Source: Macrostomum lignano
Taxonomy: Eukaryota
DNA: 64,000 nt
Direction of reading: 5' to 3'
Assembly: GCA_002269645.1 (NCBI GenBank)
Contig: NIVC01000386.1
Span: forward strand, 310,001-374,000
The notes under the pieces: generated by a model
What the model saw: only the letters and a program-made list of their open reading frames with translations
What the model was told of the DNA's origin: nothing
Databases searched by the model: none
Made by a program: the position numbers and the translations under genes
In this document: one piece after another, positions 1,831-63,800 of the stretch
How the letters are laid out: each line of letters starts with the position of its first letter
Numbering within the stretch: the first letter of the stretch is position 1

Positions 1831-2559
1831 GGCAAGGGAGGTTGCAAGCAGCGGGGAGAATTGGAGACGGGGAGGCTGGATGCTTTTTATGCATCTTCGG
1901 ACTCCCAACTCAGCCAATGACCACCTGGATGAATAATTCACAGTCTCCGAGAAATTTGCGAGCCATTGTGTTTGTCAGCGATGGAGGAAATGCTGGGCTG
2001 CACAGGCTTGGAGCAGAAACTGAGGCAGGCCCGCTAATGAGCAAGCAAGCCGTGGGTTGGCAGGCTTCACTAGAAAAGCTAAAAATGGTTACCTGTTGGA
2101 ATCTGCAGCAGGTGCGTCGCCTGGTTTCTAACATCTTCTCTCCGTCGCTAACGTCCTTAGACAGAAATTGCGTGCCAGAATTATGATAAATGCTCCGTCA
2201 TGGCTAAAAAACATTTCTGCCTTTACTTCCAGGAGCTTCCAATTAGTTAGGGAGAATTTTTTATAATCTTTTTTGAGATCTTCTAACTCAACCAGTTGGT
2301 AGTGCTTCAATTGCAAGGACAAAAATGTCTGCAAGTAATGGTCGACCCTACTTGAAGTAGAAAAAAGGTTTTCACTTTAAACACCAGAGACTGTGCTGTG
2401 GTCTTTCGTATACAATGGTTTCGTATACCAGCTGACTCGAATGACTGCTCATCATCGATACTTGAAAACATGTGGCACTTTTTCAAAACTGTTGTAATTG
2501 ATACGGACCGTGCCCGTTCGTGCCCGTGTGCTGATGACAGAATAGAACATTGGGTTTCA

Positions 2560-3998
2560 GAAGACAATATTCGGTGTCAGAGACAAGTATTGGGTGTCAG
2601 AGACAAGTATTGGGTGTCCGAGACAAGTATTGGGTGTCAGAGACAAGTATTGGGTGTCAGAGACAAGTATTGGGTGTCCGAGACAAGTATTGGGTGTCAG
2701 AGACAAGTATTGGGTGTCCGAGACAAGTATTGGGTGTCAGAGACAAGTATTGGGTGTCCGAGACAAGTATTGGGTGTCAGAGACAAGTATTGGGTGTCCG
2801 AGACAAGTATTGGGTGTCAGAGACAAGTATTGGGTGTCAGAGACAAGTATTGAGTGTCCGAGACAAGTATTGAGTGTCCGAGACAAGTATTGGGTGTCAG
2901 AGACAAGTATTGGGTGTCCGAAACAAGTATTGGGTGTCCGAGACAAGTATTGGGTGTCCGAGACAAGTATTGGGTGTCAGAGACAAGTATTGGGTGTCCG
3001 AGACAAGTATTGGGTGTCAGAGACAAGTATTGGGTGTCAGAGACAAGTATTGAGTGTCCGAGACAAGTATTGAGTGTCCGAGACAAGTATTGGGTGTCAG
3101 AGACAAGTATTGGGTGTCCGAAACAAGTATTGGGTGTCCGAGACAAGTATTGGGTGTCCGAGACAAGTATTGGGTGTCCGAGACAAGTATTGGGTGTCAG
3201 AGACAAGTATTGGGTGTCCGAGACAAGTATTGGGTGTCAGAGACAAGTATTGGGTGTCCGAGACAAGTATTGGGTGTCAGAGACAAGTATTGGGTGTCCG
3301 AGACAAGTATTGGGTGTCAGAGACAAGTATTGGGTGTCCGAGACAAGTATTGGGTGTCAGAGACAAGTATTGGGTGTCAGAGACAAGTATTGAGTGTCCG
3401 AGACAAGTATTGAGTGTCCGAGACAAGTATTGGGTGTCAGAGACAAGTATTGGGTGTCAGAGACAAGTATTGGGTGTCAGAGACAAGTATTGGGTGTCCG
3501 AGACAAGTATTGGGTGTCAGAGACAAGTATTGGGTGTCCGAGACAAGTATTGGGTGTCAGAGACAAGTATTGGGTGTCAGAGACAAGTATTGAGTGTCCG
3601 AGACAAGTATTGAGTGTCCGAGACAAGTATTGGGTGTCAGAGACAAGTATTGGGTGTCAGAGACAAGTATTGGGTGTCAGAGACAAGTATTGGGTGGTGT
3701 CCGAGACAAGTATTGGGTGTCAGAGACAAGTATTGGGTGTCCGAGACAAGTATTGGGTGTCAGAGACAAGTATTGGGTGTCCGAGACAAGTATTGGGTGT
3801 CAGAGACAAGTATTGGGTGTCCGAGACAAGTATTGGGTGTCAGAGACAAGTATTGGGTGTCCGAGACAAGTATTGAGTGTCCGAGACAAGTATTGGGTGT
3901 CAGAGACAAGTATTGGGTGTCAGAGACAAGTATTGGGTGTCAGAGACAAGTATTGGGTGTCAGAGACAAGTATTGGGTGTCCGAGACAAGTATTGGGT
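2560..3998. repeat. 20-bp minisatellite AGACAAGTATTGGGTGTC(A/C)G, ~72 units
   Basis: Directly visible tandem array; explains the repetitive ORFs in this interval. Confidence 0.98.
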
Positions 3999-4039
3999 AG
4001 TCAGAAGCACCACTTGGGATGCAGTACAGTGGCGGTACA

Positions 4040-5150: not shown

Positions 5151-5336
5151 TATTGCTACTTGTAGTATTCATTCACGACTGTTGTTTTCCTGATTTGCTT
5201 TTTCCTGCAACTGCCTAGGCACTAGCCTCGTAGGTTAGTGCGCCCTACCCGTTTTTCTACCCCTTTTCTTGCATTTTCCACACGTGATCCGCGTGATAAG
5301 GCTATTTTTAGAAGCATTTCAGTGACATTTCTGATT

Positions 5337-5975
5337 GCAGACCAGTACACACTTCAACTGCAGACCAGTACACACCTAAACTGCAGACCAGTACACACCT
5401 AAACTGCAGACCAGTACACACCTAAACTGCAGACCAGTACACACCTCAACTGCAGACCAGTACACACCTCAACTGCAGACCAGTACACACCTCAACTGCA
5501 GACCAGTACACAGCCAGAGTAAAGACCAGTACACACCTAAACTGCAGACCAGTACACAGCCAGAGTAAAGACCAGTACACACCTAAACTGCAGACCAGTA
5601 CACAGCCAGAGTAAAGACCAGTACACACCTCAACTGCAGACCAGTACACAGCCAGAGTAAAGACCAGTACACACCTAAACTGCAGACCAGTACACAGCCA
5701 GAGTAAAGACCAGTACACAGCTAAACTGCAGACCAGTACACAGCCAGAGTAAAGACCAGTACACAGCTACACTGCAGACCAGTACACAGCTAAACTGCAG
5801 ACCAGTACACAGCCAGAGTAAAGACCAGTACACGGCCAGAGTAAAGACCAGTACACAGCTAAACTGCAGACCAGTACACAGCCAGAGTAAAGACCAGTAC
5901 ACAGCTACACTGCAGACCAGTACACAGCCAGAGTAAAGACCAGTACACAGCTAAACTGCAGATCAGTACACAGCC
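5337..5975. repeat. Composite 23-bp minisatellite (CAGACCAGTACACACCTAAACTG and CCAGTACACAGCCAGAGTAAAGA units)
   Basis: Two related 23-bp units, first homogeneous and then interspersed. Confidence 0.95.
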
Positions 5976-6288
5976 AACTGCTCCAACTCAGTCTGCTCGC
6001 ATCTACAGAACCTGAGTTGCTGAGATGAGCAGCCCCAGAGTAGTGTAAAATAAGCTGAAATTCAGAGTCGCGGTTAGCATTTGAATTTTTGGGATGCTCG
6101 AGGAAAAAGGGCCAGCTGGCGTTGTTTATTCGTGTCTGTCTTAGACCGGGACTTGCGTCAGGGATCAATTTGTCAAGTCTCTCAGATAAACCTCTTGAAT
6201 GAAGGATTTGCGCTGTTATTCAATCTTCAGGTGCGATCAGATTCTCAGAAGTTCGAACTGTACTGCTGGCTTCCATGGGGCCACCGCT

Positions 6289-7478
6289 TCAAACCTGCTG
6301 GCACCAGCTGTCCAGCAGCGCGAACTCGGACTGGTTGAGCACTCGAGTGCTCAGACCGAAGCAGGAGATGCTGCCTTGGATGGAGAATCCGCTGACAGGG
6401 AAGCCCCCAAGCTGCAGGCATTGGAAATTCGCAGTGCTGAGGCCGGATTTCGATTTTGTTGAATTTAGGCTGGCAGCGCGGCTGCTCCCGTTGAAGAAGA
6501 AGCTGACGGCTTCGTCCGTGTCGTAGGAGACCCCGGTGGAGACCAGGGCGACTGAGCTGCTTCTGCTGTACACGGTGCCGGAATTGTAGAGGTAGGATAT
6601 TCCGTCAGCGGGCCAGAACACCTGGTGCCAGGTTTCTCCTTTGTGAGTGTACAGGTCGTGAGCCACGGATGTCCAGGATGTTCCGGTGCAGTTCCGGAAG
6701 GCTGCGTAGGTGCCGCTGCAATTAAGAGAGGGTTTGGAACTCTCAGCCCCATTCGCACTGTGGTGCACAATCACTCAGCAAGAACCCGAGCTCCACTTGA
6801 ACTTTAACTGCCTCAGAGGAGACTCACTCGATGTCCAGCGGGTGCTTGGCCCGGACGAAGAAGGAGAACTTGTTGCCCTTGTTGACCACCGTCTCGAAGC
6901 CGGGCGTCTCAGCCATCAGGAAGGAGTCCGGGCTCTGCACAAAGTGCGCACCAGAGGCGTTCACCACCGTGGCGCTGCCGCTCCTCAGCCGGTGCTGGCA
7001 CGGGTCGGCGACGTTCTCGAGGCCGTGGCTGGCGAACCTGTAGAGCAGCTTGAGCCCGAGCTGGCCCACAATCGGGTCCAGAGAAGACCGCACTGGAGTG
7101 GCTGGGGTGGTCAGGGGGATTTGCAAAGCATTCGGAAGGAACAGAGAAAATCCAGCACCGGACTTCCAGCTCACGGAAGCTACCTGCTCTGTAGGAGTCG
7201 CAGGGCCCATCGCTCCACAGCGCCAGTCCGTCGCAGGTGGAGTTGCCATGGAAACAGAGACCGGCTGTCCGGTTGAAGTGGAACAGGTCGCAGTCCGGCC
7301 TGCTGCTGCACGCAGCGCCGCAGCGAATTTTCGACTTCTCGGCTCGGGCGGGCAGCGCGGAGAGCCGCGGGCACAGGGCGGTCGCTTTGAACTGCCGGCT
7401 GGTGGAGAGGCCGAGGCAGCCCTGCAGAAGCTGCAGGAGGACGGCGCAGCACAGGAGGAGCTCGCGGTGGGGGCTCAT
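6289..7478 (-). CDS. Secreted PAN/Apple + ConA-like (LamG3/pentraxin-like) protein, paralogue B, ~342 aa; exons 7478-7184, 7092-6828, 6757-6289
   Basis: Frame-consistent GT-AG model; signal peptide; PAN domain; ConA-like motifs FSFFVR, WHQVF, FFFNG, LQLGG, QGSISCF, RVLNQSE. Confidence 0.85.
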
Positions 7479-9610
7479 GGCTGCGGCGCCGGCGGGCGGG
7501 CGGAGCGGCGGGTCGGGGCGAGTCTGCAGGCCTTTAAATCGGCTGCCGCCCAGCCAATCAGCGCCGGATTTGCTTGAAACGCCCTCAAGCAAAGAGTATT
7601 CTGCAAAAGAAAAGGCTCTTTGAATGGAAGCTTCTCATAATAGCTATCAGGCGAACGGTTGCTAAGGAAGTGGCGGGACTGCTCAAACTTCAGTTTTCTA
7701 CGAAGCAGAAGAGAATTGGAACATCTGTGGTATTGAAAATTTGATAGAAAAGCCCATGAGACTCACGGAGCTGCTTAAGCTGGTTTACATGCTCAAACAG
7801 TTGATGTCTTTGCTGGTGTTGGAAACGAGTTTGGGACTCAGAGGATGCAGGGCGCGGCTCCTCAAGGTGAATACCAGTATACGCTTCTGTCGCATCAAGT
7901 CCCCTCAGGCTGCTTAGCTTCAAAGCGACAGATAATCCCAGGCAACCAGGCCCAAGGCTAATGAGAAAGGTCCCACAAGTTGAGTAAAAAGACTGTTCTA
8001 AGCTAGATTGGAATGCTTTATCACCGAATTTGGCTGAATGAATTTCTTAAGAAGGGTGTCTTTTTGAATGCCGATTTCTTTAATTCTGCGATATTTTCCA
8101 GTCCTGCAATATCTGCAATCTCTGAATCCTTCAAGTCTATTATCTCACTTCTAATACTATTCTATTTGATCTCCGAGCGAATACTTTTTTCACTGCTCAA
8201 CAAAACTGGTGAAACCTTAGGACTATACAGCCATACGCAGCCTCCAGATGCGCCGCGCAATAGCTGCGACTGAGCTGTCTGTCGGTTGCTTGGAGCAGGT
8301 GTAATCAATTATTACGAGTATTATTTATTATTAAAACCAAAATTTCACATCACCGAAAACTGCTGCATGGTCCCCCTCCCTCTGAAAAATGAAGGCACAT
8401 TATAGACGCATATTCTATGTATCTCCACTCTTAGAAGAAAAATTGCTTGTTCGACAGGTTTCTTTTCCCACAAAACTTCTCGCGTATCACGTAGCAGCTC
8501 AGGGTCCCCTTGATTTCTCGTAATTCTGATTTCTATTCATTCCTTCACAGACCCTTAAGAGGGCCCATGTCGGACATTTATTTTTCCTGCGCCTTCTAAA
8601 GCTTGCTACCTTACCTCAATTTTCCCGATCAGCTGCCCCAGTCGCTCATCAGTCCCGTGTTCCATTTGCAGCATTATCTCACTAGGGCGTCTTGGCGTTG
8701 TAGCGTGCGGCGTGACGCGATAGCAAACTAGAAATGCATTCAGGCACTCTAGTGCATCATGGGAATCCCTCATGCCTATTCTCAACGCTCTCTTAGCGGT
8801 CTGAACCATCCGTTCAGCGAATCCATTTGGCCGCGGATGTCTCACAGACGTGATTTGGCAGCTTCGGAGATTCTTTAGTTCGTCCGAAGTGATTTATCTT
8901 GGATAACCGTATCGAATGATTGCTGCAGCTTGCCAATCGTGCCACGGGTAGTCGCTGATCTCATAAGAAAATTTCCACTCACTTGGTCGTGGCAGCCTCA
9001 ATAATCGTCAGCCACATGAACCCGTAGCAAGAACCGAAGAAGTCCAAACAGAGTCCACGGTTTTCCTGGCCATTGTAATGGTTGGAGTGGAACGTGAGCC
9101 ATTGGATTCCTCTGGGCTTATCAGCCCTGCAGTTGGGCAAAGCTGTCTCGATGTATTTGTTGATCCTCGGGTACGAAACGTGCGGCCGAGCTTACTTCAT
9201 CCCCAAGATTCCATGATGGCCCTTCTTAAGAGAAGCAGAGAGCAAAAATCCGGATGCCTCACAAGGTGACTCATCTTGGACACTTAGCTCATTTCGCCTT
9301 GAGTAATAGAATTGAAGTTCTAGGCGAGATCAAAGGACAGATCTTGGTCCGTTGCAGTCGCTCTCTTTAACTATTGGTGGTTAATTGGCTGAGCTTCTAT
9401 GCAATTTTGACACACATCATCTTCGTGACCCAGCATTCTCCAGTGGCAAGCTTGGAAATGCGTCTGCATTTTCATGTTCATCCGTCCGGCTCTATCGAAT
9501 CTCAAATTGATAGGCTGACAGAATCACAGCCCAGAGCTGCAACCGACTGGCAGATATTCTTGGGATTTACAAAAGTTAAAATCAACATAGATTATAATAA
9601 ATTCTTTCTT

Positions 9611-9647
9611 CCGACGCGTTTCGGTCCAACAATGACCATCTTCAGGG
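9611..9647 (-). ncRNA. Minimal hammerhead ribozyme of Penelope-like element type
   Basis: Minus strand CC-CTGAAGA-T-GGTC-attgttg-GACC-GAAA-CGCGTC-GG: CUGANGA and GAAA cores, helix II, palindromic ACGCGT helix III, GUC cleavage triplet; lies 3' of the GIY-YIG ORF. Confidence 0.8.
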
Positions 9648-9790
9648 TCTGGTGTATTTTTAACTCACACAACAACTTTATAAGTGAACAAATGTTAACT
9701 GTACAGTCCAAAGGGCATGTCATGGGCAGAATTTTCCAAAAAAATGTTAAGCATAGATTGCAAGTACATTGTTCAGACTAGTGCCTTTAC

Positions 9791-10277
9791 TTAGAATACC
9801 TTGAGCAAATGGCCCGCACCACTATGGGAGAGCTGAATATTCAGATTAGGTTTTTGGTCTTTAATGTACATGGATTCAAGTATGTTGAGCCTAAAATCAG
9901 TTCTATACCGATCAATAATTTTAAACTGCTGAGTTTGCTCAATTTCGCAACAACTGTTGCAACAGAGCAGGTGGTCTTGGATAGCCGACCTTTTTAACCA
10001 ATGCTCTCTGACTCTGGTGTACAGGTGCCTTTTAGTTTTACCTATATAGGTAATGTTCTGGTCAACAGAACAAGAGAACTTATACACAACACTTGCCGCC
10101 AGAGCAAGAGGAACATGGGATTTCAGTCTACTAACGTATTGGCCGACCTTAGCAGTGCGGAAAACAATCTTAATAGGCGTGTTAAAGAATTTACGGAAGC
10201 TTTTCTCAATTTTCTTCTTCAACAGGTTAGAGCAGTTGCCATAGAAAGGCAAGACCATGGTCGGGCAAGTTTTGGAT
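9791..10277 (-). pseudogene. Penelope-like GIY-YIG endonuclease C-terminal fragment
   Basis: Open frame from KTCPTMVLPFYG to stop; 5' RT portion missing. Confidence 0.85.
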
Positions 10278-10753
10278 GATTCGTTGTTTGTTGCTCTGAT
10301 TCGTTGTCTGTTGCTCTGCGTCTGATTCGTTGTTTGTTGCACAGGGCCTACACGGTTTGCAGCTCTTGGACCAATCTCAACATTGAAGTTAACAATCTCA
10401 CCAAAATTCTGAGAATGAATCAATTTCCCAAGAATCTCATTTGCAGTGAAATCAATAGATTCATCTCTAATAAAATGACGAAGAAACCGAGTTTTGCTTC
10501 TGATAAGGATGTGTTAAAAACTTGCCCGACCATGGTCTTGCCTTTCTATGGCAACTGCTCTAACCTGTTGAAGAAGAAAATTGAGAAAAGCTTCCGTAAA
10601 TTCTTTAACACGCCTATTAAGATTGTTTTCCGCACTGCTAAGGTCGGCCAATACGTTAGTAGACTGAAATCCCATGTTCCTCTTGCTCTGGCGGCAAGTG
10701 TTGTGTATAAGTTCTCTTGTTCTGTTGACCAGAACATTACCAATATAGGTAAA

Positions 10754-10956
10754 ACTAAGGCTGCGGTTTGCGCTAGGCTTGCCTTGAGCAAACCGGCTTT
10801 AGTGCCCAAGTGCGCTGCGTCTGTGGTGCGCCCCCCCCCCCGCCGCGTGTGTACGTTCTGTGTTGTTTAGGTGGGCGCCCACCCCTCCGCCGGTGGGGGG
10901 GGTATTTTACTCCAGCCGCGCTGCTGCGTTGGCAGTGTTTTCGCGCAGTTCTTTTT
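10754..10956 (+). repeat. Ngaro repeat A1 (second copy A2 at 14805-15005)
   Basis: ACTAAGGCTGCGG...CAGTTCTTTTT is repeated; by eye the differences are in C and G homopolymer lengths. Confidence 0.95.
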
Positions 10957-10986
10957 GCACTGAACTCTAATGCCAATCGCTGAATC

Positions 10987-12027
10987 ATGGCTAGCACTGA
11001 CACTGTCAAGTCACTGCGCGAGAGGTTGCAATGCCTAGGCCTGCCAACCCACGGAAACAAAATGGAGCTATTGGAGAGGCTGTCTGCACACATCGACAGC
11101 GTTACATAACTGCAGGACGGCGATGATCGCAGACCTTCACTGACCCCGGAGACGACTCGCTCGAAGAACATTCAAGATTTGCTGGCGGCTGCGGCGGACG
11201 GCGAAGCTGCGACGGCGGCGTCAGAGTCTGGAGCGGCTGGCGGCCTGGACGACGAGGTGCGGGAAGTCGAGCAGCGTATACGGCTGCTGAAACTGCGCAA
11301 GGAAGAAGCCGAGCTGCAGGCCGAGGTTAACCTATTGCAGCGGCACCGGGCTCCCTCAACTAACCATGGTGAGTTGTTTGGTCACGTGATATCAGGGAGT
11401 GAGTCAGCTAGACCAGCGATCCCGCATGGTACCTACCGCATCCCCGAATTCATCTGTAAACGCAAGCAGCAGGAAGCGGGTATCATCCAGTCTGTTGATC
11501 GGACAGGTAAAGTTGTCTACAAAGTGAAGGAGGCAGCGTTAGAATCTCTGACCTTTGGCGACTGGATTGCTGGCAATGCGCGCATAATGCTGAAGATGCT
11601 GGATGATGGAGCTCTAGTTAAGAGCGGTGAAGGAGAATGTCCTGATGTTTCTGAGCTCCGAGACTACCTGCGCTTTAATATTCGGATAGGAGAGCTTTTT
11701 GACCTTGGTTTCGAGAAGACCCGCGTCATGAGATTCGACGATGAGTGCAGAATAAGCCAGACAGCTACTACCTCTTGGGAAGCCAGAGCCTCCGACATGG
11801 GTCTGGTGGCCGCCTACCTGATGGCACCACAGAGGGGTCCGACTGCCTCAGAGAGACTGTCGAAGCGGAGCCAGCAGCCTGTGTGCTTTGATTTCAATAA
11901 AGAAGCCGGTTGCAGCAGAAGAAACTGCAAGTTTGCTCATCAATGCCGGAGGTACGGTCTAGGCCACTCAGAAGCGGCTGCCCACCGGGATGGCGTGGGC
12001 ATCGAGACGGCCAGGCCCTCGCACTGA
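10987..12027 (+). CDS. Ngaro gag-like ORF1: N-terminal SAP-like domain, coiled coil, C-terminal CCCH finger; in-frame TAA at 11107-11109
   Basis: MASTDTVKSLRERLQCLGLPTHGNKMELLERL; CFDFNKEAGCSRRNCKFAHQC; ATG 10987 is in frame with ORF 11179-12027. Confidence 0.75.
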
Positions 12028-13731
12028 CTGAGTGCCCGTAGTGATTTTAACGTCCCCGTTTTATCTACAGATTTGAGGTTCGTGGAGTGGGAGAAGGAGC
12101 TGTTGTGTATTGATTTGCCTATGGATCGGAAGAAGTTTATTCTCGATGGTGTTGCATATGGTTTTCGTATAACTAACAAAACTGTTTCTGACTGCAAGTC
12201 AATTGATGTTAACAACTACCATTCTGTCAATGTGCATTTCGAGGCTGTGGAAAAGCAGATTAAGAAGGAGCTCGGGTGTGGCAGGTATCGCGAATGCCCG
12301 ACCGGCTGGCGTCCGCAAGTGGTCAGTGCTCTCGGAGCCTTGCCCAAGGTTGGTGGCCGTGTGCGCCTGATTCACGACTGCAGTCGGCCCGTGAATAACT
12401 CTGCGAACTCCAGATGGGTCAGCCAGGAGAGGCTGCGCTTCACGTGTGCCGACAACTTTGCGAGGAAGCTTTCTAGAGGCTGCTTTATGACTAAGGTGGA
12501 TCTCAGCGAAGCGTACCGCGCCTGTGGTGTTCACCCCGATGATTTCAGCCGGACAGGGATCAAGTTCCGCTTCGGCGAGTCCAAGGCAGCCACCTACATG
12601 TATGACACCCGTTTGCCGTTTGGCGCTGCAGCTTCTTTTACCTGTTTTCACCATCTTAGCAATGCTGTGCGTTTAATGATGGTGCGCAGAGGCTTTGTGG
12701 GCACCGAGTCCTACCTGGACGATTTCGCCTTCGCGGGCTCGCGTGACGAATGCCAGCGGTTTTACGACGAGCTGACAGGCCTGTTGACGCGGCTGGGCTT
12801 CACTGTAAACTGGGCAAAGTGTCAGACACCAACTCAGCGCATGACCTTCCTTGGTGTCGAGTTCGATACAGTTGCCGGCATCAAGAGGTTGCCCGAGGAG
12901 AAGGCGAGGAACCTCGCTGAGTTGTTAGCAACTGAAAGGAGCAAAACCAGGATCAGCAAGTGGGCTTTGCAACGCTTGATCGGCAAGCTTGGCTGGGCAG
13001 CACAGGTGATTCGCAAAGGAAAAACTTTTCTGCGTGATTTGATCGAAGTATGCAACGCGATGCGGCCTGACGAGAGAATTAAAGTCAGCTTACAGCTCTG
13101 TGACCAATTCTGCTGGTGGATTGTAGCGCTGGAGTCGGCCCGGTGGGTGGAGCTCTGGCCTGTTTTCAAGAACCATGTGGCGATCGAGTCCGATGCATGT
13201 GGCAGAGGCGGGGCAGCGGTGCTTCGAAGGTCAGATGGCAGTTGGGACTGGTGCTACATCAATTGGAGCCAGGATGGGGCCGGAGTATTCGCTGATCTGC
13301 CAATCAACTACAAAGAGGCGGTGGCTCCTTTGGTGTCAATCCTGCCCTGGAGGGAAGAGCTGAAAGGCTGTAACGTTAGCGTTTATTGTGACAACATGGC
13401 GGCCTGTCATATTATCAATAATGGCACTTCGAGGTGTCCTGTCGTGCAGAGGCTACTGCAAACGATTGCGTTGATGTCTTTACGGCATGGTCTGAGTGTG
13501 CGAGCCTTTCATGTGCCGGGAGAGTTTCAAATTCTCGCCGATGCAGCGTCTCGGTTGCACGAGCGCAGTCAGTTGATTAATTTTTTATTTCGCTGCTATG
13601 GCAACTTGTGCCCGTTTGCTTTGCAATCAATGCATCGACATGCTTTCTGCCCTGCCTCTGCCCACTTTCTTCATTTTCAGGCCGTCCAGCTGCGCCAGAC
13701 TCTCTCAGCCGCCGGGCCGCGTCGCTGCTAG
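12028..13731 (+). CDS. Ngaro reverse transcriptase / RNase H, uninterrupted
   Basis: RLIHDCS, KVDLSEAYR, RLPFG, YLDDF, FLGVEFD; RH ESDAC, INYKEA, YCDNMAA, ILADAASR; same frame as gag, immediately after its TGA. Confidence 0.95.
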   Translation: MSARSDFNVPVLSTDLRFVEWEKELLCIDLPMDRKKFILDGVAYGFRITNKTVSDCKSIDVNNYHSVNVHFEAVEKQIKKELGCGRYRECPTGWRPQVVSALGALPKVGGRVRLIHDCSRPVNNSANSRWVSQERLRFTCADNFARKLSRGCFMTKVDLSEAYRACGVHPDDFSRTGIKFRFGESKAATYMYDTRLPFGAAASFTCFHHLSNAVRLMMVRRGFVGTESYLDDFAFAGSRDECQRFYDELTGLLTRLGFTVNWAKCQTPTQRMTFLGVEFDTVAGIKRLPEEKARNLAELLATERSKTRISKWALQRLIGKLGWAAQVIRKGKTFLRDLIEVCNAMRPDERIKVSLQLCDQFCWWIVALESARWVELWPVFKNHVAIESDACGRGGAAVLRRSDGSWDWCYINWSQDGAGVFADLPINYKEAVAPLVSILPWREELKGCNVSVYCDNMAACHIINNGTSRCPVVQRLLQTIALMSLRHGLSVRAFHVPGEFQILADAASRLHERSQLINFLFRCYGNLCPFALQSMHRHAFCPASAHFLHFQAVQLRQTLSAAGPRRC

Positions 13732-14666
13732 GCGTCTCTTATGCACCACGGTCAAGGCAGGCGGTGGCAAGGCACATCCGTGAGTGGCTAGCTTACTGCA
13801 AGCAGACCCGCTGCAGTCCTGTATCCTGTCCGCTGAACAGCCTGCTCGACTACCTGGCCAGCCTAGTCGGGACGCGTTTGCGTGCGTACGGCAGCGTTGC
13901 TTCTGTCGCCAGCTCGCTGTCCGTTTAGTTTCGCGTCAACTCTGCACCAGACCTGACGAAGCATGCCGCAACGACTCTCCTCCTGCGAGGTGCCAAGCGA
14001 GAGCTGGGACTTCGGGTGTCGAGAAAACGACCAGTATCGCCGCTCATGTTGTCGGAGATTCATCAGCGAGTCAGTCGTTCTGACGGGCTTCAGCTGGCAT
14101 GCTGGGCAGTCGCCATCTGCTGTTGGTGGGGCATGCTCCGAAAATCCAGCGTGATACCGACTTCGGGAAAAGGTCCGGCACGTGTGCGCTGCGCTGACAT
14201 CTTTCGACACCCGCGAGGTCTGATCTTGCGCCTGGAGCAAGGGAAGACTCTCCAGTTCAAAGAGCGGGTGCACCAGGTGCTTCTACCAAGGCTAGTGAGG
14301 CGGACGTCGCTGTGCCCGGTGTTAGCAATCGAGCAGCACGCAAGATTCAATAATCTGCAATCGGCTGATGCGCCTCTGTTCACTTATCGCGACGCCGGAG
14401 GCAACCAGCGGCTGCTGACAGGCAGGCAGCTCGATCGCTTCCTAGCGGACAAGCTAGGGGCTGCGGGCTTCAGGCGTGAGCACTTCTCAGCCCACAGCCT
14501 CCGCCGTGGCGGCGCGACCTGGGCCTCGGTGTTGGGTGTGCCGGTGCCCGACATCATGCGGATCGGTGACTGGAAGAGCGACTCAGTGCAGCGGTATCTC
14601 CCGCAGTCGCAGCAGGGCTTGGCAGCTTCCGTCGTGTTTGCTAGAGGTGTGGGATCCCTCGTTTGA
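13608..14666 (+). CDS. Tyrosine recombinase ORF3 with an in-frame TAG at 13926-13928; overlaps the end of RT/RH
   Basis: Catalytic motifs MLRKSS (R), SAHSLRRGGAT (HxxR), GDWKS (W), VQRYL (Y); ORFs 13608-13928 and 14016-14666 are one frame; no ATG before the TAG. Confidence 0.9.
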
Positions 14667-14744
14667 CGTTGGCATCAGCTTTACGATGTTCCGTTTCCTT
14701 CAATTTTTTCTTTCGCGCGCTTTCCCGTTGTTGTTTCGGCTTTG

Positions 14745-14809
14745 GAGGCCTCGTTACTGCTTTCGCTTTCGCCAACATCGCGTATTCGTGTTTTGCTTTG
14801 GGGCACTAA
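14745..14809 (+). repeat. Ngaro repeat B1 (second copy B2 at 15055-15119)
   Basis: 65-bp GAGGCCTCG...GGGGCACTAA duplicated with one mismatch; AATAAA motifs lie between A2 and B2. Confidence 0.95.
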
Positions 14810-15222
14810 GGCTGCGGTTTGCGCTAGGCTTGCCTTGAGCAAACCGGCTTTAGTGCCCAAGTGCGCTGCGTCTGTGGTGCGCCCCCCCGCCGCGTGTGTA
14901 CGTTCTGTGTTGTTTAGGTGGGCGCCCACCCCTCCGCCGGTGGGGGGGGGGTATTTTACTCCAGCCGCGCTGCTGCGTTGGCAGTGTTTTCGCGCAGTTC
15001 TTTTTTTTCTTCTTCTTTTATCCTTATTCTTTTAATCAATAAAATATAAATAAAGAGGCCTCGTTACTGCTTTCGCTTTCGCCAACATCGCGTATTCGTT
15101 TTTTGCTTTGGGGCACTAAAAGGCACCTGTACACCAGAGTCAAATTCGTCACATGCGGTTTGTGGTACGTGACCAGTATGAACCGTAGGCCATAAGGTAC
15201 TGGTGAAATTTCTTCACCGCAA

Positions 15223-16864: not shown

Positions 16865-18421
16865 GCAGGAACGAGCTATGTGAGTTCTTCGCCACCATTG
16901 CTAGCGCGCCGCGACCCACGCTGCCCTGCTGCCGCCGGAGATGCCGTTGCCGGCAGAGGAGAGCTAGCCTAGCACCAGTCAGCACAGCCAACGTTGTGAG
17001 GCTCGCCCAACAGTCACCGGGCGGGAAAGCGCTAGGTCCGGACGAGGTGCCCATCGAGGCGCTGCGCATCCACTGTGTGTCCAGTGAGGTCGCCAGAGTG
17101 ATGAATCGCGAGCTCTTCGGTGAGGAAGCACCCAACGAATGGACCACTGCGCGCATCGTCGCAGTTCCTAAGAAGCCGGGCGCCACGAGGCTTGAGGAGC
17201 ATCGAGGTATCTGCCTTCAGTCCTGCGCTGCGAATTTGTTCAATCGGTACCTGCGTCCTGAGCAGAACGGCTTCCGGCCCTATCGCGGCACAGTGACGCA
17301 GATCCTGGCTCTTCGGCGAGTCATCGAGGAAGCACGGATACGCCAGTCGATCCTGATTGTTATCTTCATAGATTTCAAGAAGGCATTCGACTCGGGCGTC
17401 AGGTCTGTGCTCACAAAGGTGCTCCGTGCGTACAATGTGCTGATTTCCGCCATCATGGCGATCTACCTTGATACGAAAGCTTCTGTTTCAACACCGGACG
17501 GCCTATCGGACTTCTTTGAGGCATCCTCCGGTGTGCTTCAGGGAGATACGCTTGCACCATTCCTGTTCGTTCTGGTGCTTGACTGGGTGCTGCGGACCGC
17601 TCTTCCTACCAACGACGACGGCTTTCTGTTGCGGCGATGCGTGATTCGACGTCAACCAGAGAGGCGGCTCAGCGTGCTCGGCTACGCCGACAATCTCGCC
17701 CTGCTGTCCTCAACTGTCAGCGACAATTGGCCAAGATAGTTGCTGTTTCGGCGAGTGCCAGTCTAGTGGTCAACACGCAGAAGACCGTCATGCTCTGCGT
17801 GCCCGACGACATCGAGGCTGTGATTTTGTGCCGAGGCGCTGATGGACAGGCGACAGAGCTTCCGCGTTGTCAGCAGTTCATCTACCTCGGCGGTCTGGTT
17901 CCCATCTTCCGCGATTATTTGCGGCGTCGCCGCGGGTTATCCTGGGCTGTATTTCGTTATGTGAGGGCAGCCCTGCAGTCCGAGGCCTTACCTGACCGCC
18001 AGAGGGCGGAGTTGTTTCAGGCGGTGATCGAGAACGTCCTGCTGTACAACGCCGAGACCTAGACGCTGACGAAGTCGCTCGAACAACAAGTTGACGCGGT
18101 GCAAGCTGGCCTGCTGCGCGCCAATTTTAAGATCGGCTACGAGCGTGTGACCAACGCGGCTTTGTATCACCGCGCCTGCCTGGTCCGTCCAAGCGACCTG
18201 TTGCACCGTCGGCGACTCCATCTGTCAGGCCACATCATCCGCGGCGTGTTGTACTGCCCGGAGCCGGTGCAGGAGACACCCTACCGGCGATGGCAGGCGT
18301 GCACTCGGCGTTTCGTCGACTGCCTGCTGGCTGACGCCGGCGCCCCGGATTCGGCCGGTGGCGTGGCGTTCATTCGCGACCTGGCCTTGAGGCGCAGCCT
18401 GGGACGCTAACTGTTGTTGTT
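16865..18421 (+). mobile_element. 5'-truncated, frameshifted RTE-clade LINE
   Basis: KALGPD, QNGFRP, FIDFKKAFDS, GVLQGDTLAPFLF, YADN (mutated YADD), YLGG, LYNAET; (GTT)n tail. Confidence 0.9.
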
Positions 18422-22164: not shown

Positions 22165-23135
22165 CAGGCTGGCCCAGCAACTGAGGATCTGAGAGGCTGG
22201 CCCAGCAACTGAGGATCTGAGAGGCTGGCCCAGCAACTGAGGATCTGAGAGGCTGGCCCAGCAACTGAGGATCTGAGAGGCTGGCTCAGCAACTGAGAAT
22301 CTGAGAGGCTGGCTCAGCAACTGAGGATCTGAGAGGCTGGCCCAGCAACTGAGGATCTGAGAGGCTGGCCCAGCAACTGAGGATCTGAGAGGCTGGCCCA
22401 GCAACTGAGAATCTGAGAGGCTGGCTCAGCAACTGAGGATCTGAGAGGCTGGCTCAGCAACTGAGGATCTGAGAGGCTGGCCCAGCAACTGAGAATCTGA
22501 GAGGCTGGCCCAGCAACTGAGGATCTGGGAGGCTGGCCCAGCAACTGAGGATCTGGGAGGCTGGCTCAGCAACTGAGGATCTGAGAGGCTGGCTCAGCAA
22601 CTGAGGATCTGAGAGGCTGGCCCAGCAACTGAGGATCTGAGAGGCTGGCCCAGCAACTGAGGATCTGAGAGGCTGGCCCAGCAACTGAGGATCTGAGAGG
22701 CTGGCCCAGCAACTGAGAATCTGAGAGGCTGGCTCAGCAACTGAGGATCTGAGAGGCTGGCTCAGCAACTGAGGATCTGAGAGGCTGGCCCAGCAACTGA
22801 GAATCTGAGAGGCTGGCCCAGCAACTGAGGATCTGGGAGGCTGGCCCAGCAACTGAGGATCTGGGAGGCTGGCTCAGCAACTGAGGATCTGAGAGGCTGG
22901 CTCAGCAACTGAGGATCTGAGAGGCTGGCTCAGCAACTGAGGATCTGAGAGGCTGGCTCAGCAACTGAGGATCTGAGAGGCTGGCCCAGCAACTGAGGAT
23001 CTGAGAGGCTGGCTCAGCAACTGAGAATCTGAGAGGCTGGCCCAGCAACTGAGGATCTGAGAGGCTGGCCCAGCAACTGAGGATCTGAGAGGCTGGCCCA
23101 GCAACTGAGGATCTGAGAGGCTGGCTCAGCAACTG
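22165..23135. repeat. 28-bp minisatellite GGCTGGCCCAGCAACTGAGGATCTGAGA
   Basis: Tandem array; reverse complement of the unit at 49055-50275. Confidence 0.97.
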
Positions 23136-23869
23136 AAGATCGGAGAAGGAAGTCAGAAGAGTAAGAGATTTGAAAAAATGAAGCAACTCGAAACTCTTAA
23201 GAGCAGTGCTGCAGATTGAAGCAAACGCAGTGTTTAAAACAGGTAAACAAAACATGTAGACAGCGCGCATAGCACTCAATGTATTTACTGTCAAAACATG
23301 TGACAGCAATTATATTGTTCTGATATTAGTCATTTAAACGTGCGGAACGAGCAGAAACAATCGACCTGGCTCGCTGTCAATCTAAATGATGCAAGATATC
23401 ACAGGCTGCTGTACACAGCTGTCCGGCGGTTTGGCACTTCCTGTGCTGTGCAGCTGCACTGGGCTGGTGCCAATGATCGCACAATAAAATTAGTGGCGAC
23501 TTTGTACAAAATTATTTCCAACCGGAAACTGGGCGGGAAAATGCGCGCGCAGATCGAACAGCGAATACGAAAGCTACTGCAACAGGTACAGGTACAGGTA
23601 AAAATAATCTTTCCAGGAATCGGCTGACAATTCTTGAAGCCACAGGGTCAGAGAAATCGCTGGGGGGGGGGGAATTGTGTAAGAAAGGTCGCAGACTCAA
23701 AGTATATCAAACTACCAATAAATTTGCTAATCGGCTGTTGATTGAAACAAGCGCAATCTAGCTGAGCTGGGACAGTTTAAAGGAAGCTGAGAAAAGCATG
23801 GAAGCACAGTGTGAATACTGCTGTGGCTCACTGAATTCAGTGAGAACTGGATGAGCATGAGCAGTATTA

Positions 23870-39400: not shown

Positions 39401-41395
39401 CACCAGAATATAGACGGCGATTCGGTCCCCATTGCGTTCTATTCACGGAAACTCACCAAAGCGTAAACGGCATACAGTACAGCGCGTTCGACCGTGAACT
39501 TCTAGGCGTGTTCGCTGCCGTCAAAACATGGCGACACATCATTCACGGCCACCCCACGACCGTGTTTAGCGACCACAAGCCGTTAGTCGGTGCATTCAAC
39601 AGCAATAAGGAGCGCCTATCCGATCGGCAGCAGCGCCAGTTGGCCACCATCTCAGAATATGTGATCGACATCATTTACATCCCGGGAGCCAAGAACGTGG
39701 TCGCCGATACCTTAACTCGTGACACCGTCAAACCTGGCAAGCACACAGTGAACACTGTCCAATCAGAAGACGTGTACACATTGCATTTGCCCGCAGATCT
39801 CCCTGCGATCGCCAAGGCACAGCGAGAAGCAGGGCTCACGAGCGGTGACCGTTACCGCCCATTCGATGTCGGATTATTAGATTGTCCCCTGTACTGCGAA
39901 ACTTCGCAACCAAACCCGCGACCGCTCATACCAGAGCACATGCGCCGTCAGGTTGTGCTAGCACTGCACAACATCGCCCACCCAGGTGTGAAGGCCACGT
40001 AGCGTTTAGTCGCCCATCGTTTTTTCTGGCCATGCATGAAGTCAGACATACAGCGCTGGACGGCAGAATGCACACAATGTCAATCAGCAAAAATTGGTCG
40101 TCATGTTTGCCGTCCACTGCACCACCTGCCTGCACCTACACAGCGGTTCACAACGGTCTGCATGGATTTAGTCGGACCGCTCCCGGCGCCGGACCCAACC
40201 GAAACAGCTGTACCCCAGCCGCGATATTTACTAACCATCGTGGACTCGTACTCCCGCTGGGTCGAAGCAATCCCATTGCAATCGATCACCAGTACGGTTG
40301 TTGCACAAGCCTTCGTTGCCCACTGGGTTTGTCGATTTGGCCCACCGTTAACACTCATCACAGACCAAGGAGCTCAATTTCGCTCGGAATTAATGGCAAA
40401 CCTGGTGAAACTTCTCGGCGTCCATCACATCCGCACGGCCGCATATAATCCTAAGGCCAACGGCATGATCGAGCGAGTTCATCGCACACTGAAGGTGAGC
40501 CTCAGAGCTCGCGGCCGGTGCTGGCTTAACCAGCTGTCCATCGATTTATTCGGATTGCTCATTAACCCGGACGACCAGAGTCACTCGCCATTCTCAATCG
40601 TCACAGGAGAACAGCCGCTAGTTCCACCGGTTACAACTAATGACGTCGACCAGCGTCAGCTGTCGACTCAACTACACGACCTGTTTTTCCCGTACCGCCT
40701 GCCGCGGACCCGTCAGCAGCCTGTCCACATACCTCCGGAGCTGGAGTCCTGCGAGTTCATGTGGCTCCGAGTTGACAGTGTTAAGCAATACTCGAGGCGC
40801 CATATCAAGGACCCTACAAGGTGTTGCGACGCTCAGCAACCACCGTGACGCTCGTCATAAAAGGCAAGCCCCAGGCCGTTTCTATCGAGAGAGTGAAGCC
40901 GGCAGTGCTACCAGGAGACAGTCAGCGCCAGACCCGAGCAATGACGAAAGAGGCACGGCCGGATAAGCCAACGACTAATACCCCTGCGACGAAACATCGT
41001 CCCGCGAAGGAAGCCCAATGAGTTCGTTTTTCCGAGAAGCCAACAGTTCACGTTATTGATTATTGATCAACAATCCCTTATCGAACAATCAACTAACAAA
41101 CAGAAATTAAATTAACTTTACTGATCGCCAAACATCGTTTATAGTTGTTCGCTTTTCCATTGGGGGAAGTGTTTGTAGTGCCTTGTTTCCCACTGTCCTT
41201 GCGTAATAAAAGTACTTTTTGTTGAGTGCCCACAAGCTAGGTTGTCTATGACCCAAACTCCAACTTTCGGTTTCAGCCCCAAAGTAACTGTACTTTATTT
41301 TTATTAAATAGACGCGATCGCCCCCCAGCCGAGGTTTAACCTTCGCTCAACTTAATTAATCGTCTTCATCTTTTGGTAGCCAGCGCTACACTACC
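36425..41395 (+). mobile_element. Ty3/Gypsy LTR retrotransposon, defective; putative 3' LTR ~41170-41395, 5' LTR not found
   Basis: gag TWFKQLESQFRLAN; protease FLVDTSAE; [24 protein letters not shown]; RH SDASS; INT HNIAHPG, CMDLVGP, TDQGAQF, ANGMIER; GPY motif; PPT GGGGGAAG at 41162; stops at 39464 and 40000. Confidence 0.92.
36501..37244. mobile_element. 744-bp non-autonomous DNA transposon inserted in Gypsy gag
   Basis: 17-bp TIR CCCTATTGGAATAAGTT at both ends; 8-bp TSD ACAATTTA / ACAATTCA; removal restores gag ESQFRLAN. Confidence 0.9.
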
Positions 41396-58876: not shown

Positions 58877-63667
<4,791 letters not shown>

Positions 63668-63685
<18 letters not shown>

Positions 63686-63800
63686 GTAGGTGGCCGGGCA
63701 CTTACCATGGACAATCGGACAGGTAGGTGGCCGGTCACTTGGCCATGGACAATCGGACGGGTAGGTGGCCGGTCGCTTGGCCATGGACAATCGGACAGTT
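63668..63800. repeat. 37-38-bp repeat of exon end plus donor CATGGACAATCGGACAG|GTAGGTGGCCGG, 3-4 copies
   Basis: Visible at the cadherin exon 3 boundary. Confidence 0.9.

What the first reader, a model, noticed from the sequence alone, without database searches (positions are those of the whole stretch)
10740..15141. Filled and empty target sites in one window define a 5-bp ACTAA crossover core for YR integration
Seen: the left junction is GGTAAA-ACTAA-GGCTGCGG, the right junction GGGGC-ACTAA-AAGGCACC, and the internal B1/A2 (circle-like) junction GGGGC-ACTAA-GGCTGCGG. The uninterrupted target GGTAAA-ACTAA-AAGGCACC survives in the inverted Penelope arm (10021-10043, minus strand). Established: YR retrotransposons are thought to integrate a circular intermediate by recombination over short homology, without a true TSD. 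Inference: exchange occurred within ACTAA, which would be the target requirement.
Basis: partly seen in the sequence, partly recalled or inferred. Interest (0 to 1): 0.72.

Follow-up and report, generated by a model that had tools for sequence, protein, structure and literature searches.

The report
Ngaro-like retrotransposon insertion sharing ACTAA with target
A young tyrosine-recombinase (Ngaro-type) retrotransposon sits inside one arm of an inverted Penelope-like repeat, and it shares 5 bases (ACTAA) with its target, as the published short-homology integration model predicts; one insertion cannot show that ACTAA is required, and ten insertions of related elements (about 9 families) argue against a strict requirement.

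Summary
ACTAA is present at the left junction (10754-10758), at the internal B1/A2 junction (14805-14809) and at the right junction (15115-15119). It occurs once in the uninterrupted inverted arm (10032-10036, minus strand). The joined flanks match that arm at 81 of 82 positions.

The element (10759-15119) has split direct repeats A1-[ORFs]-B1A2-spacer-B2, a SAP/gag-like ORF, an RT/RNase H ORF and a tyrosine recombinase. It has no methyltransferase-sized domain, so it is Ngaro-like.

A target-site duplication is excluded because the same 5-mer lies at the internal junction. Recombination between a circle junction and a short matching target sequence is already the published model for DIRS-order elements (3 bp) and Cryptons (4-6 bp).

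"ACTAA is the target requirement" is not established. No second copy of this family could be found. In ten insertions of related elements (about 9 families) the left junction matches the element core only partly (22/40 over 4 nt, none perfect), while the right junction carries the full element core in eight of nine cases. This places the exchange at the 3' edge of a conserved ..TAA|GG boundary.

A new observation is that this boundary is the end of one arm of a conserved, covarying inverted repeat (hairpin) in all nine families examined.

The parts
10009..10273 (-). Uninterrupted arm of the inverted Penelope-like (GIY-YIG) repeat. It holds the empty target site ...GGTAAA-ACTAA-AAGGCACC... (ACTAA = 10032-10036 on the minus strand).
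   Evidence: the repeat finder I1/I2; ORF 9791-10423 minus strand with GIY-YIG hit; flank-join comparison 81/82
10517..10758 (+). Left part of the interrupted arm, ending with the left copy of ACTAA (10754-10758). By analogy with relatives this copy is target-derived.
   Evidence: analogy
10759..10956 (+). A1 repeat (starts GGCTGCGG). It contains TTAGTGCCC at 10799-10807, the inverted partner of the B end GGGCACTAA.
10987..12027 (+). ORF1: N-terminal SAP domain, an in-frame TAA at 11107-11109, then a gag-like region with a C-terminal Cys/His-rich motif (C-x8-C-x5-C-x3-H, read from the translation; Pfam found no zinc-finger family in this ORF).
   Evidence: Pfam SAP E=4.5e-7 and no family for 11110-12024; translation; gag-position ORFs of some relatives carry weak zf-CCCH hits
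12073..13731 (+). ORF2, intact, 552 aa: reverse transcriptase plus RNase H. There is no room for a methyltransferase domain.
   Evidence: Pfam RVT_1 E=4e-10, RT_RNaseH E=1.5e-3; homologues at 60% identity or less
13608..14666 (+). ORF3: tyrosine recombinase with the R..K..HxxR..W..Y residues conserved, interrupted by an in-frame TAG at 13926-13928.
   Evidence: Pfam Phage_integrase E=5.9e-4, below cut-off; alignment with six relatives' recombinases, invariant R137, K172, H255, R258, W281
14745..14809 (+). B1 repeat, ending with the internal ACTAA (14805-14809).
14801..14858 (+). Two-tier hairpin / inverted repeat across the B1|A2 joint. The lower stem is GGGCACTAAGGC / GCTTTAGTGCCC and the upper stem is CGGTTTGC / GCAAACCG.
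   Evidence: strand folding as DNA: -22.3 kcal/mol, z=-5.0, 0 of 200 shuffles as good; inverted-repeat test P=0.0012; the same architecture in 8 related families
14810..15005 (+). A2 repeat.
15006..15054 (+). T-rich spacer with two AATAAA hexamers (15038-15043, 15049-15054), probable polyadenylation signals just upstream of B2.
   Evidence: read directly from the sequence
15055..15119 (+). B2 repeat, ending with the right copy of ACTAA (15115-15119). By analogy with relatives this copy is element-derived.
15120..15142 (+). Right part of the interrupted arm (AAGGCACCTGTACACCAGAGTCA). Homology to the other arm ends at 15142.

Best explanation
An Ngaro-type tyrosine-recombinase retrotransposon inserted, after the inverted Penelope-like repeat had formed, into the codons of the YIGKTK|RH motif of one arm.

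Shown: its cDNA carried a B-ACTAA-A joint identical to the internal B1/A2 joint, and it recombined with a target that had ACTAA at the matching place. This left one ACTAA at each end and no true duplication.

Inferred, by analogy with ten insertions of related elements: the left ACTAA comes from the target and the right one from the element. The strand exchange lies at the 3' edge of the core (..TAA|GG). The core is the inner part of a recombinase-recognition arm or stem (GGGCACTAA) that has an inverted partner inside A. The enzyme prefers, but does not strictly need, target bases that resemble the last 3-5 bases of that arm. ACTAA is therefore a well-matched target for this family, not a demonstrated requirement.
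For: Structure and junctions.

Domains and catalytic residues.

A target-site duplication is excluded because the 5-mer is also at the internal joint. Chance frequency is about 7e-4 to 4e-3.

Published model of recombination between a 3-bp circle junction and an identical genomic sequence, without duplication: PMC3266345 and PMC7192593.

Relatives: the internal joint is conserved as ..TAA(A)|GG in 8 of the 9 families examined, counting the window; L008 has TTAAA|TC. The 4 nt left of A match the element core at 22/36 positions against 10.6 expected, P about 1e-4, with no perfect match; with L014 added the count is 22/40. The right flank shows no similarity to the start of A (0-2 of 6). The right junction carries the full element core in 8 of 9 usable cases; L013 has one substitution.

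The inverted repeat is anchored at the boundary in every family. Combined P is 1.2e-10 for 8 families, and a ninth shows the same fold. Folding z-scores range from -2.5 to -5.6.
Against: There is only one insertion of this family, so its own target spectrum is unknown.

The relatives are distant (34-39% RT identity) and their cores are A/T-rich, which makes alignment register and chance matches uncertain.

The copy has two in-frame stop codons, so it may have been mobilised in trans or have decayed since insertion.

No circular or other intermediate is observed here, and for DIRS-1 the detected cDNA is mostly linear and single-stranded (PMC7192593).

The hairpin could serve a different purpose, such as an RNA packaging, priming or template-switch signal, and only coincide with the boundary.
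Confidence: 0.65

Rival explanations
1. ACTAA is a 5-bp overlap (crossover) region in the classical tyrosine-recombinase sense. Both strand exchanges flank it, and identity between circle and target over all 5 bp is required.
For: There is a perfect 5/5 identity at the only insertion for which the empty site is known. Classical tyrosine recombinases need identical overlap regions (general knowledge). A published 3-bp identical-sequence model exists.
Against: In ten insertions of relatives no left junction matches the core perfectly, even over 4 nt. The mismatching version is always at the left junction, and the full element core is at the right junction in 8 of 9 cases. Random segregation of a heteroduplex overlap would not give that pattern. 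Known overlap regions are 6-8 bp, not 5 (general knowledge).
Confidence: 0.15
2. The ACTAA pair is a 5-bp target-site duplication made by staggered cleavage, as with DDE integrases of LTR retrotransposons.
For: The same 5 bp lies at both ends and occurs once in the empty site. 4-6 bp duplications are typical of LTR elements (general knowledge).
Against: The same 5-mer lies between B1 and A2 inside the element, which a duplication does not predict (about 1e-3 by chance). No DDE integrase was found; a tyrosine recombinase is present instead. The ends are split direct repeats, not LTRs. Relatives have no flanking duplications.
Confidence: 0.02
3. The match is coincidental. Integration is essentially sequence-independent, or merely A/T-biased, and ACTAA at the target is chance.
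For: There is only one event. The relative L014 shows 0/4 and L007 1/4 matches. Targets of relatives are simply W-rich at positions -1 to -6.
Against: The probability of the window match is about 7e-4 to 4e-3. The relatives' left flanks match their cores about twice as often as the local background, P about 1e-4.
Confidence: 0.08
4. Host repair (microhomology-mediated joining or annealing of a linear cDNA) inserted the element, and ACTAA is the microhomology that was used.
For: DIRS-1 cDNA is mainly linear and single-stranded (PMC7192593). 5 bp is a typical microhomology length (general knowledge).
Against: The element ends coincide exactly with the internal B|A boundary in the window and in every usable junction of the ten relatives' insertions across about 9 families. 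Repair of random cDNA ends would not give this. Microhomology would be needed at both ends, but the right flank shows none to the start of A. The boundary is marked by a conserved inverted repeat.
Confidence: 0.07

Closest known systems
Ngaro retrotransposons (DIRS order; Goodwin & Poulter 2004, as described in PMC4157794, PMC9210276, PMC8547959)
   Same: Split direct repeats A1-[ORFs]-B1A2-B2 with the internal repeats downstream of the recombinase. Gene order is gag-like, RT/RNase H, tyrosine recombinase. There is no methyltransferase domain.
   Different: ORF1 starts with a SAP domain. No SGNH hydrolase ORF is present. The RT is at most 60% identical to anything in the protein collection searched. 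Phylogenetic placement against reference Ngaro sequences was not done.
DIRS1-like elements and their 3-bp circular-junction integration model (PMC3266345; PMC7192593, citing Poulter & Goodwin 2005)
   Same: A short sequence at the circle-junction template is also found at both ends of the element and in the target, and there is no target-site duplication. The junction triplets reported there are A/T-rich (AAT/AAA/AAC), as are the ..TAA cores here.
   Different: DIRS1-like elements have inverted terminal repeats plus an internal complementary region and a methyltransferase domain. The shared sequence here is 5 nt in this insertion. In relatives the match to the target is imperfect, not identical.
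Cryptons (tyrosine-recombinase DNA transposons)
   Same: They are flanked by 4-6-bp direct repeats that are interpreted as microhomology between the element circle and the target, not as duplications (PMC13465315).
   Different: Cryptons have no reverse transcriptase and no split direct repeats.
Folded or hairpin recombination sites of bacterial tyrosine recombinases (integron attC, CTX phage attP(+)); recalled from general knowledge, analogy only
   Same: An inverted repeat forms a stem that carries the cleavage point. Only a very short sequence is shared with the duplex target. The products are asymmetric, as expected from exchange of one strand.
   Different: There is no evidence here that the hairpin is the substrate, and it may act in RNA instead. 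The recombinases are only distantly related.
LTR retrotransposon 5-bp target-site duplication
   Same: The same 5 bp lies on both sides of the insertion.
   Different: The 5-mer is also internal. There are no LTRs and no DDE integrase.

Membership tests
Ngaro (DIRS order) | Encodes RT/RNase H together with a tyrosine recombinase instead of a DDE integrase | tested here: met
   Pfam RVT_1, RT_RNaseH and Phage_integrase (weak). The R-K-HxxR-W-Y residues are conserved in the alignment. The recombinase ORF has one in-frame stop at 13926.
Ngaro (DIRS order) | Split direct repeats A1 ... B1 A2 ... B2, with the internal pair downstream of the recombinase | tested here: met
   The repeat finder D1-D4 and blastn: A 10754-10956 / 14805-15005; B 14745-14809 / 15055-15119.
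Ngaro (DIRS order) | No methyltransferase-like domain after RNase H | tested here: met
   ORF2 is 552 aa. The RNase H match ends at residue 462 and the recombinase ORF starts at 13608, inside ORF2. No further Pfam domain was found. This is absence by size and by Pfam only.
Ngaro (DIRS order) | RT and recombinase fall in the Ngaro clade in a phylogeny with reference elements | not tested
   No named reference Ngaro, PAT or DIRS1 sequences were available in the tools. Hits are unnamed or labelled 'hypothetical protein'.
DIRS1-like | Inverted terminal repeats plus an internal complementary region | tested here: not met
   No inverted repeats link the element ends. The repeats are direct and split.
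PAT-like | Split direct repeats together with a methyltransferase domain | tested here: not met
   The repeats are present, but there is no room for and no hit to a methyltransferase domain.
Short-homology (att-like) integration of tyrosine-recombinase retroelements | The same short sequence is at the circle-junction template, at both outer junctions, and once in the empty site | tested here: met
   ACTAA at 14805-14809, 10754-10758 and 15115-15119, and once at 10032-10036 on the minus strand.
Short-homology (att-like) integration of tyrosine-recombinase retroelements | The shared sequence recurs at independent insertions of the same family (a target requirement) | not testable with these tools
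   There is one copy in the window, no exact-protein record, a best homologue at 60% identity and no exact DNA match in metagenome contigs. In relatives the match is only partial.
Short-homology (att-like) integration of tyrosine-recombinase retroelements | A circular double-stranded intermediate and recombinase-catalysed exchange | not testable with these tools
   This needs experiments or sequencing of extrachromosomal DNA.
LTR retrotransposon with target-site duplication | Identical LTRs at both ends, a DDE integrase, and a duplication that is absent from the element interior | tested here: not met
   The 5-mer is also internal.
Penelope-like element (the target) | GIY-YIG endonuclease domain downstream of an RT | tested here: inconclusive
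   The GIY-YIG match has E=2.7e-4 and is 1 bit below the Pfam cut-off. The YKFSC...YIGKT..R...REH motif is readable. Both copies are 5'-truncated, so no adjoining RT could be checked.

The most novel reading that the evidence does not exclude
The integration site of Ngaro-type elements is not a simple duplex core. It is a folded structure: the last 5-9 bases of B, including the 'core', pair with a covarying partner 24-40 nt inside A. Cleavage and exchange take place exactly at the end of that stem. The target is chosen by resemblance to the stem's inner bases, and only one strand is exchanged. In this reading the exchange resembles integron attC or CTX-phage integration, or guide-directed single-strand transposition. 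It would explain why the left junction keeps the target version in all ten relatives' insertions and the right junction keeps the element version in eight of nine. In the window, ACTAA/TTAGT would be the inner five base pairs of that stem.
Probability: 0.2. Interest if true: 0.75.

Novelty: new member of a known kind. Interest (0 to 1): 0.45.

Why it matters
Integration by eukaryotic tyrosine-recombinase retrotransposons has never been reconstituted, and the short-homology model rests on sequence comparisons of a few families.

A paired filled and empty site is a clean natural example for an Ngaro-type element. It confirms the absence of a true duplication and gives a precise joint.

More useful for experiments are three features seen across about nine families: the conserved ..TAA|GG boundary, the consistent left/right asymmetry of the junctions, and the covarying inverted repeat that ends at the boundary. 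Together they define a compact candidate recombination site of about 50-70 nt. That site could be tested directly with the encoded recombinase, as duplex or hairpin and as wild type or with compensatory mutations.

If ACTAA were only a chance-assisted good match, the window itself adds an ordinary new Ngaro-like family.

Tried and rejected
Searches for the same family elsewhere:
- Exact-protein look-up of ORF2 found nothing on record.
- The homologue search gave a best identity of 60%, so the host genome is not in the collection.
- An exact scan of metagenome contigs for the B end, deliberately without ACTAA, gave 0 hits.
- blastn and tblastn of the element against the rest of the window found no second copy and no solo A or B.

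Closest relatives and unusable loci:
- L001 (60% identity) and L002 (58%) lie on contigs of 3-4 kb without 3' ends. The upstream region of L001 has no DNA similarity to A, so no junction could be defined.
- L009 has a 509-bp direct repeat but no detectable B2, so it could not be used.
- L011 and L012 are two copies tail to tail, and only one left junction is usable.

Methods that did not help:
- MAFFT with RNAalifold on the nine junctions misaligned the window and L008, because loop lengths differ, and recovered only the upper stem. I therefore used per-sequence folding with shuffles and an inverted-repeat test anchored at the boundary.
- A plus-versus-minus strand folding comparison found the plus strand more stable in 9/9 families. 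This hints at a sense-strand (RNA) structure with G-U pairs, but it is confounded by the G+T richness of the sense strand, so I give it little weight.

Literature:
- One literature search was mis-specified and returned nothing relevant.
- Goodwin & Poulter 2004 is not held, so I could not check whether the junction hairpin or Ngaro target sequences were already described there.

Rejected readings: target-site duplication, DIRS1-like or PAT-like membership, and Crypton.
Full report
**1. The observation**

- 10748-10766: GGTAAA-ACTAA-GGCTGCGG
- 14800-14817: GGGGC-ACTAA-GGCTGCGG
- 15110-15127: GGGGC-ACTAA-AAGGCACC

The repeat finder and blastn define split direct repeats. A1 (10754-10956) matches A2 (14805-15005), differing only in the lengths of C and G runs. 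B1 (14745-14809) matches B2 (15055-15119) at 64 of 65 positions. B1 and A2 overlap by exactly the 5 nt ACTAA.

The host sequence on either side is one arm of an inverted repeat. 10517-10758 pairs with 10032-10273 (241/242), and 15115-15142 pairs with 10009-10036 (28/28). The two matches overlap by 5 nt on the uninterrupted arm. Joining the flanks with a single ACTAA reproduces that arm at 81 of 82 positions, up to the point where the arm ends. The filled/empty pair is therefore real.

ACTAA is not rare: it occurs 43 times on the + strand and 56 times on the - strand in 64 kb. Finding it at one given position has a frequency of about 7e-4. A 5-of-6 or better match of the internal B end to a random flank position occurs at 0.0036.

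**2. What the element is**

- ORF1 (10987-12027) begins with a SAP domain (Pfam E=4.5e-7). It has an in-frame TAA at 11107 and then a gag-like region ending in a Cys/His-rich motif, read from the translation. Pfam found no family in that region.
- ORF2 (12073-13731) is intact at 552 aa and contains RT plus RNase H.
- ORF3 (13608-14666) is a tyrosine recombinase. The Arg, Lys, His-x-x-Arg, Trp and Tyr positions are conserved with six relatives. It has an in-frame TAG at 13926.
- RNase H ends about 90 residues before the stop of ORF2, and the recombinase ORF starts inside ORF2, so there is no room for a methyltransferase domain.
- A T-rich spacer with two AATAAA hexamers lies between A2 and B2.

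The split direct repeats, the gene order and the missing methyltransferase domain are the structural definition of Ngaro elements (PMC4157794; PMC9210276; PMC8547959). DIRS1-like membership (inverted terminal repeats plus internal complementary region) and PAT-like membership (methyltransferase) both fail. Phylogenetic placement could not be tested.

The repeats differ by one substitution plus homopolymer lengths, and the host arms differ by one base in 270. Both the inverted duplication and the insertion are therefore young. The two nonsense codons suggest decay or mobilisation in trans.

**3. The target**

The uninterrupted arm encodes ..VVYKFSCSVDQNITYIGKTKRHLYTRVREH... It has a GIY-YIG match just under the Pfam cut-off (E=2.7e-4). 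The insertion lies between the codons of YIGKTK and RH. Both copies are 5'-truncated and head to head, an arrangement I recall as typical of Penelope-like elements. 'Penelope arm' is therefore a reasonable label but is not fully proven.

The window also carries a 1218-aa cadherin-repeat ORF, a JmjC ORF, an LTR-retrotransposon pol fragment and many minisatellites. The host is therefore an animal.

**4. Target-site duplication or shared homology?**

A staggered-cut duplication predicts the 5-mer at the two outer junctions only. Here the 5-mer also sits between B1 and A2, and that joint is the template of the circle junction in the published replication models. The 5-mer is thus an element sequence that also occurs in the target, which is an att-like arrangement.

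This is the published model. [quoted passage not shown] The same idea is summarised in PMC7192593. Cryptons are described as flanked by 4-6-bp repeats that reflect microhomology with the target (PMC13465315). What is specific here is the length (5 nt) and the clean empty site for an Ngaro-type element.

**5. Is ACTAA a requirement?**

- The window has a single copy.
- ORF2 is not on record.
- The best homologue is 60% identical.
- An exact scan of metagenome contigs for the B end found nothing.

I therefore examined relatives at 34-39% RT identity that lie on long contigs. This gave ten usable insertions from about nine families: L003-L005 (one family, three loci), L006, L007, L008, L010, L011, L013 and L014.

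Their internal joints are:

| Locus | Internal joint |
|---|---|
| L003-L005 | GAATC-TAAA\|GGTAAT |
| L006 | ATAAT-TTAA\|GGTTAT |
| L007 | CATTTAA\|GGGGTA |
| L008 | GATTAAA\|TCAATA |
| L010 | GGGTTTAA\|GGGGAG |
| L011 | ACTTTTAA\|GGAGAA |
| L013 | TATTTAA\|GGTGAG |
| L014 | GTGTTTAA\|GGGGTT |

. The boundary ..TAA(A)|GG is thus conserved in eight of the nine families, counting the window's ..CACTAA|GGCTG; only L008 departs from it on the A side.

At the right junction the complete B end, core included, abuts the flank in eight of the nine usable cases. L013 has one substitution, and L011 has no usable right junction.

At the left junction the bases in front of A differ from the core:

| Locus | Left-junction bases | Element core |
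|---|---|---|
| L003 | AAAA | TAAA |
| L004 | TATA | TAAA |
| L005 | AATA | TAAA |
| L006 | TTAC | TTAA |
| L007 | ATTT | TTAA |
| L008 | TTTAA | TTAAA |
| L010 | TAT | TAA |
| L011 | TTTTTA | TTTTAA |
| L013 | ATTTTT | ATTTAA |
| L014 | ACTT | TTAA |

Over 4 nt, nine relatives match at 22 of 36 positions against 10.6 expected from their own flanks (P about 1e-4). With L014 the count is 22 of 40. No insertion matches perfectly. The signal is confined to about -4 to -1, and the right flanks do not resemble the start of A (0-2 of 6).

Because A1/A2 and B1/B2 are otherwise 99-100% identical in these copies, the deviating bases are best read as target bases, not later mutations. Relatives therefore prefer targets that resemble the last few bases of B, but they do not need identity.

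The joints also behave as if the exchange lies at the 3' edge of the core. Target bases run up to A on the left, and element bases run up to the flank on the right. If a mismatched overlap were exchanged on both strands and then segregated, the two arrangements should be about equally frequent. Only one arrangement is seen.

By analogy, the left ACTAA of the window would be the target's copy and the right one the element's. The window insertion is simply the best-matched of eleven. That fits a real preference, but it does not show a 5-bp requirement.

**6. A conserved structure at the joint (new here)**

The match list showed the reverse complement of GGGCACTAA inside A. A systematic check found that in every family the last 5-9 nt of B, ending exactly at the boundary, have a perfect inverted partner 24-40 nt inside A, enclosing a second small palindrome:

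| Locus | Arm at end of B | Partner inside A |
|---|---|---|
| window | GGGCACTAA | TTAGTGCCC |
| L008 | TAGATTAAA | TTTAATCTA |
| L010 | GGGTTTAA | TTAAACCC |
| L011 | ACTTTTAA | TTAAAAGT |
| L006 | AATTTAA | TTAAATT |
| L004 | TCTAAA | TTTAGA |
| L013 | ATTTAA | TTAAAT |
| L007 | TTTAA | TTAAA |

L014 has the same architecture.

Folded as single strands, all nine give the same two-tier hairpin, with z-scores from -2.5 to -5.6 against dinucleotide shuffles. I also ran a test that asks only how long a suffix ending at the boundary has its reverse complement within the next 60 nt, compared with every other position of the same locus. It gives P between 0.0012 and 0.076 per family and 1.2e-10 combined for eight families.

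The arms differ between families but stay complementary. That is what one expects either from a base-paired stem (in RNA or single-stranded cDNA, or as a cruciform) or from two inverted binding sites for the family's own recombinase.

Three further points bear on this:
- If the central palindrome were extruded, the two arms would be about 6-10 nt apart. This is my own count from the folds, and it is close to the spacing of classical core sites.
- The sense strand folds more stably than the antisense strand in 9 of 9 families, but base composition confounds this comparison.
- The three YR-less derivatives (L008, L010, L014) keep the repeats and the hairpin, as expected for a cis-acting site.

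I could not check whether this hairpin was described in Goodwin & Poulter 2004, which is not held. None of the open papers I searched mention it.

**7. Most likely mechanism**

Shown: this is an Ngaro-like element whose ends coincide with its internal B|A joint; a 5-mer is shared by joint and target; there is no duplication; a conserved ..TAA|GG boundary ends one arm of a covarying inverted repeat; and relatives show partial, one-sided target similarity.

Inferred: the encoded recombinase recognises the arm GGGCACTAA, as duplex or stem, and cleaves after ..TAA. It then does the same at a target whose last 3-5 bases resemble the arm and joins them. ACTAA is thus recognition sequence or microhomology next to the exchange point, and not an overlap that must be identical.

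Whether one or both strands are exchanged, and whether the substrate is a double-stranded circle, a cruciform or a folded single strand, cannot be decided here. The consistent asymmetry, the lack of right-flank homology and the reported single-stranded DIRS-1 cDNA keep a single-strand-exchange, integron-like reading alive. I put it at about 0.2.

**8. Verdict**

The element is a new member of a known kind, and the principle is known. The claim of a 5-bp requirement is unproven and, judging from relatives, probably too strong. The added value is the clean empty site and the conserved junction hairpin with its asymmetry, which give a compact and testable candidate recombination site. Interest is moderate.

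Noticed in passing
window 14801-14858 (also 10799-10807 in A1); L004 8751-8786; L006 8703-8740; L007 8722-8772; L008 8160-8205; L010 8109-8157; L011 8728-8770; L013 9039-9076; L014 7976-8016: A conserved two-tier hairpin / inverted repeat spans the B|A joint in nine Ngaro-like families. Its outer arm ends exactly at the element boundary, and the arms covary between families.
   Followed up: yes
L003-L008, L010, L011, L013, L014 junctions (coordinates): The junctions are asymmetric. The right junction keeps the element's full B end in 8 of 9 usable cases (L013 has one substitution). The left junction carries a deviating, presumably target-derived version in all 10. Random resolution of a mismatched overlap would not give this.
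   Followed up: partly
L008, L010, L014 (whole loci): These related copies have gag and/or RT/RNase H, complete split direct repeats and the junction hairpin, but no recombinase gene (tblastn negative). They are probably non-autonomous derivatives mobilised in trans, and their RT clusters have 40, 20 and 5 member sequences respectively.
   Followed up: partly
L003 4551-8756: This copy of the L004/L005 family consists only of A-internal-B, followed directly by flank (no A2-spacer-B2). It could arise from B1 x B2 deletion or from integration of a one-junction circle. It may be related to the 'isolated AB repeats' reported for Cafeteria Ngaros (PMC8547959).
   Followed up: no
L011/L012 about 5981-12045: Two copies of one Ngaro-like family lie tail to tail as a 2.9-kb, 99.97% identical inverted duplication that shares a single B2. 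This may be a palindromic rearrangement, an assembly artefact, or an insertion next to an existing copy.
   Followed up: no
window 10987-11106: ORF1 of the element begins with a SAP DNA-binding domain (Pfam E=4.5e-7), followed by an in-frame TAA. A DNA- or chromatin-binding module in the gag-like protein could influence target choice, as was suggested for ORF1 of Cafeteria Ngaros.
   Followed up: no
window 11107-11109 and 13926-13928: There are in-frame stop codons in ORF1 (TAA) and in the recombinase ORF (TAG), although the terminal repeats are nearly identical. The copy was either mobilised in trans already defective or decayed quickly.
   Followed up: no
window 10009-10273 / 10517-10758 + 15120-15142, spacer 10274-10516: Two 5'-truncated Penelope-like (GIY-YIG) fragments lie head to head at 99.6% identity. 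The + copy extends about 100-140 nt further 5' and stops 28 nt after the insertion site.
   Followed up: partly
window 2549-4005, 5336-5976, 22166-23146, 26158-27274, 49055-50273, 52064-53643 and about 30 more: The window is packed with long minisatellite arrays (periods 15-50 bp, up to 70 copies). The same 28-bp unit appears on opposite strands at 22166-23146 and 49055-50273.
   Followed up: no
window 60070-63726; 46758-47825: There is a 1218-aa open frame with at least four cadherin repeats (E=2e-65) and a JmjC-domain ORF (E=9e-42), so the host is an animal. The species was not identified.
   Followed up: no
window 38438-39466, 40036-40848; 16996-17739: An LTR-retrotransposon pol fragment is present (RT, RNase H, rve integrase), along with a separate RT-bearing ORF just downstream of the Penelope/Ngaro cluster. 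Neither was examined further or reconstructed.
   Followed up: no
L013 4430-4463 and 9589-9620: This relative is inserted in a short tandem repeat (ttttcaaggac units). Its right-junction core has one substitution (ATTCAA against ATTTAA), the only right junction that deviates from the internal joint.
   Followed up: no
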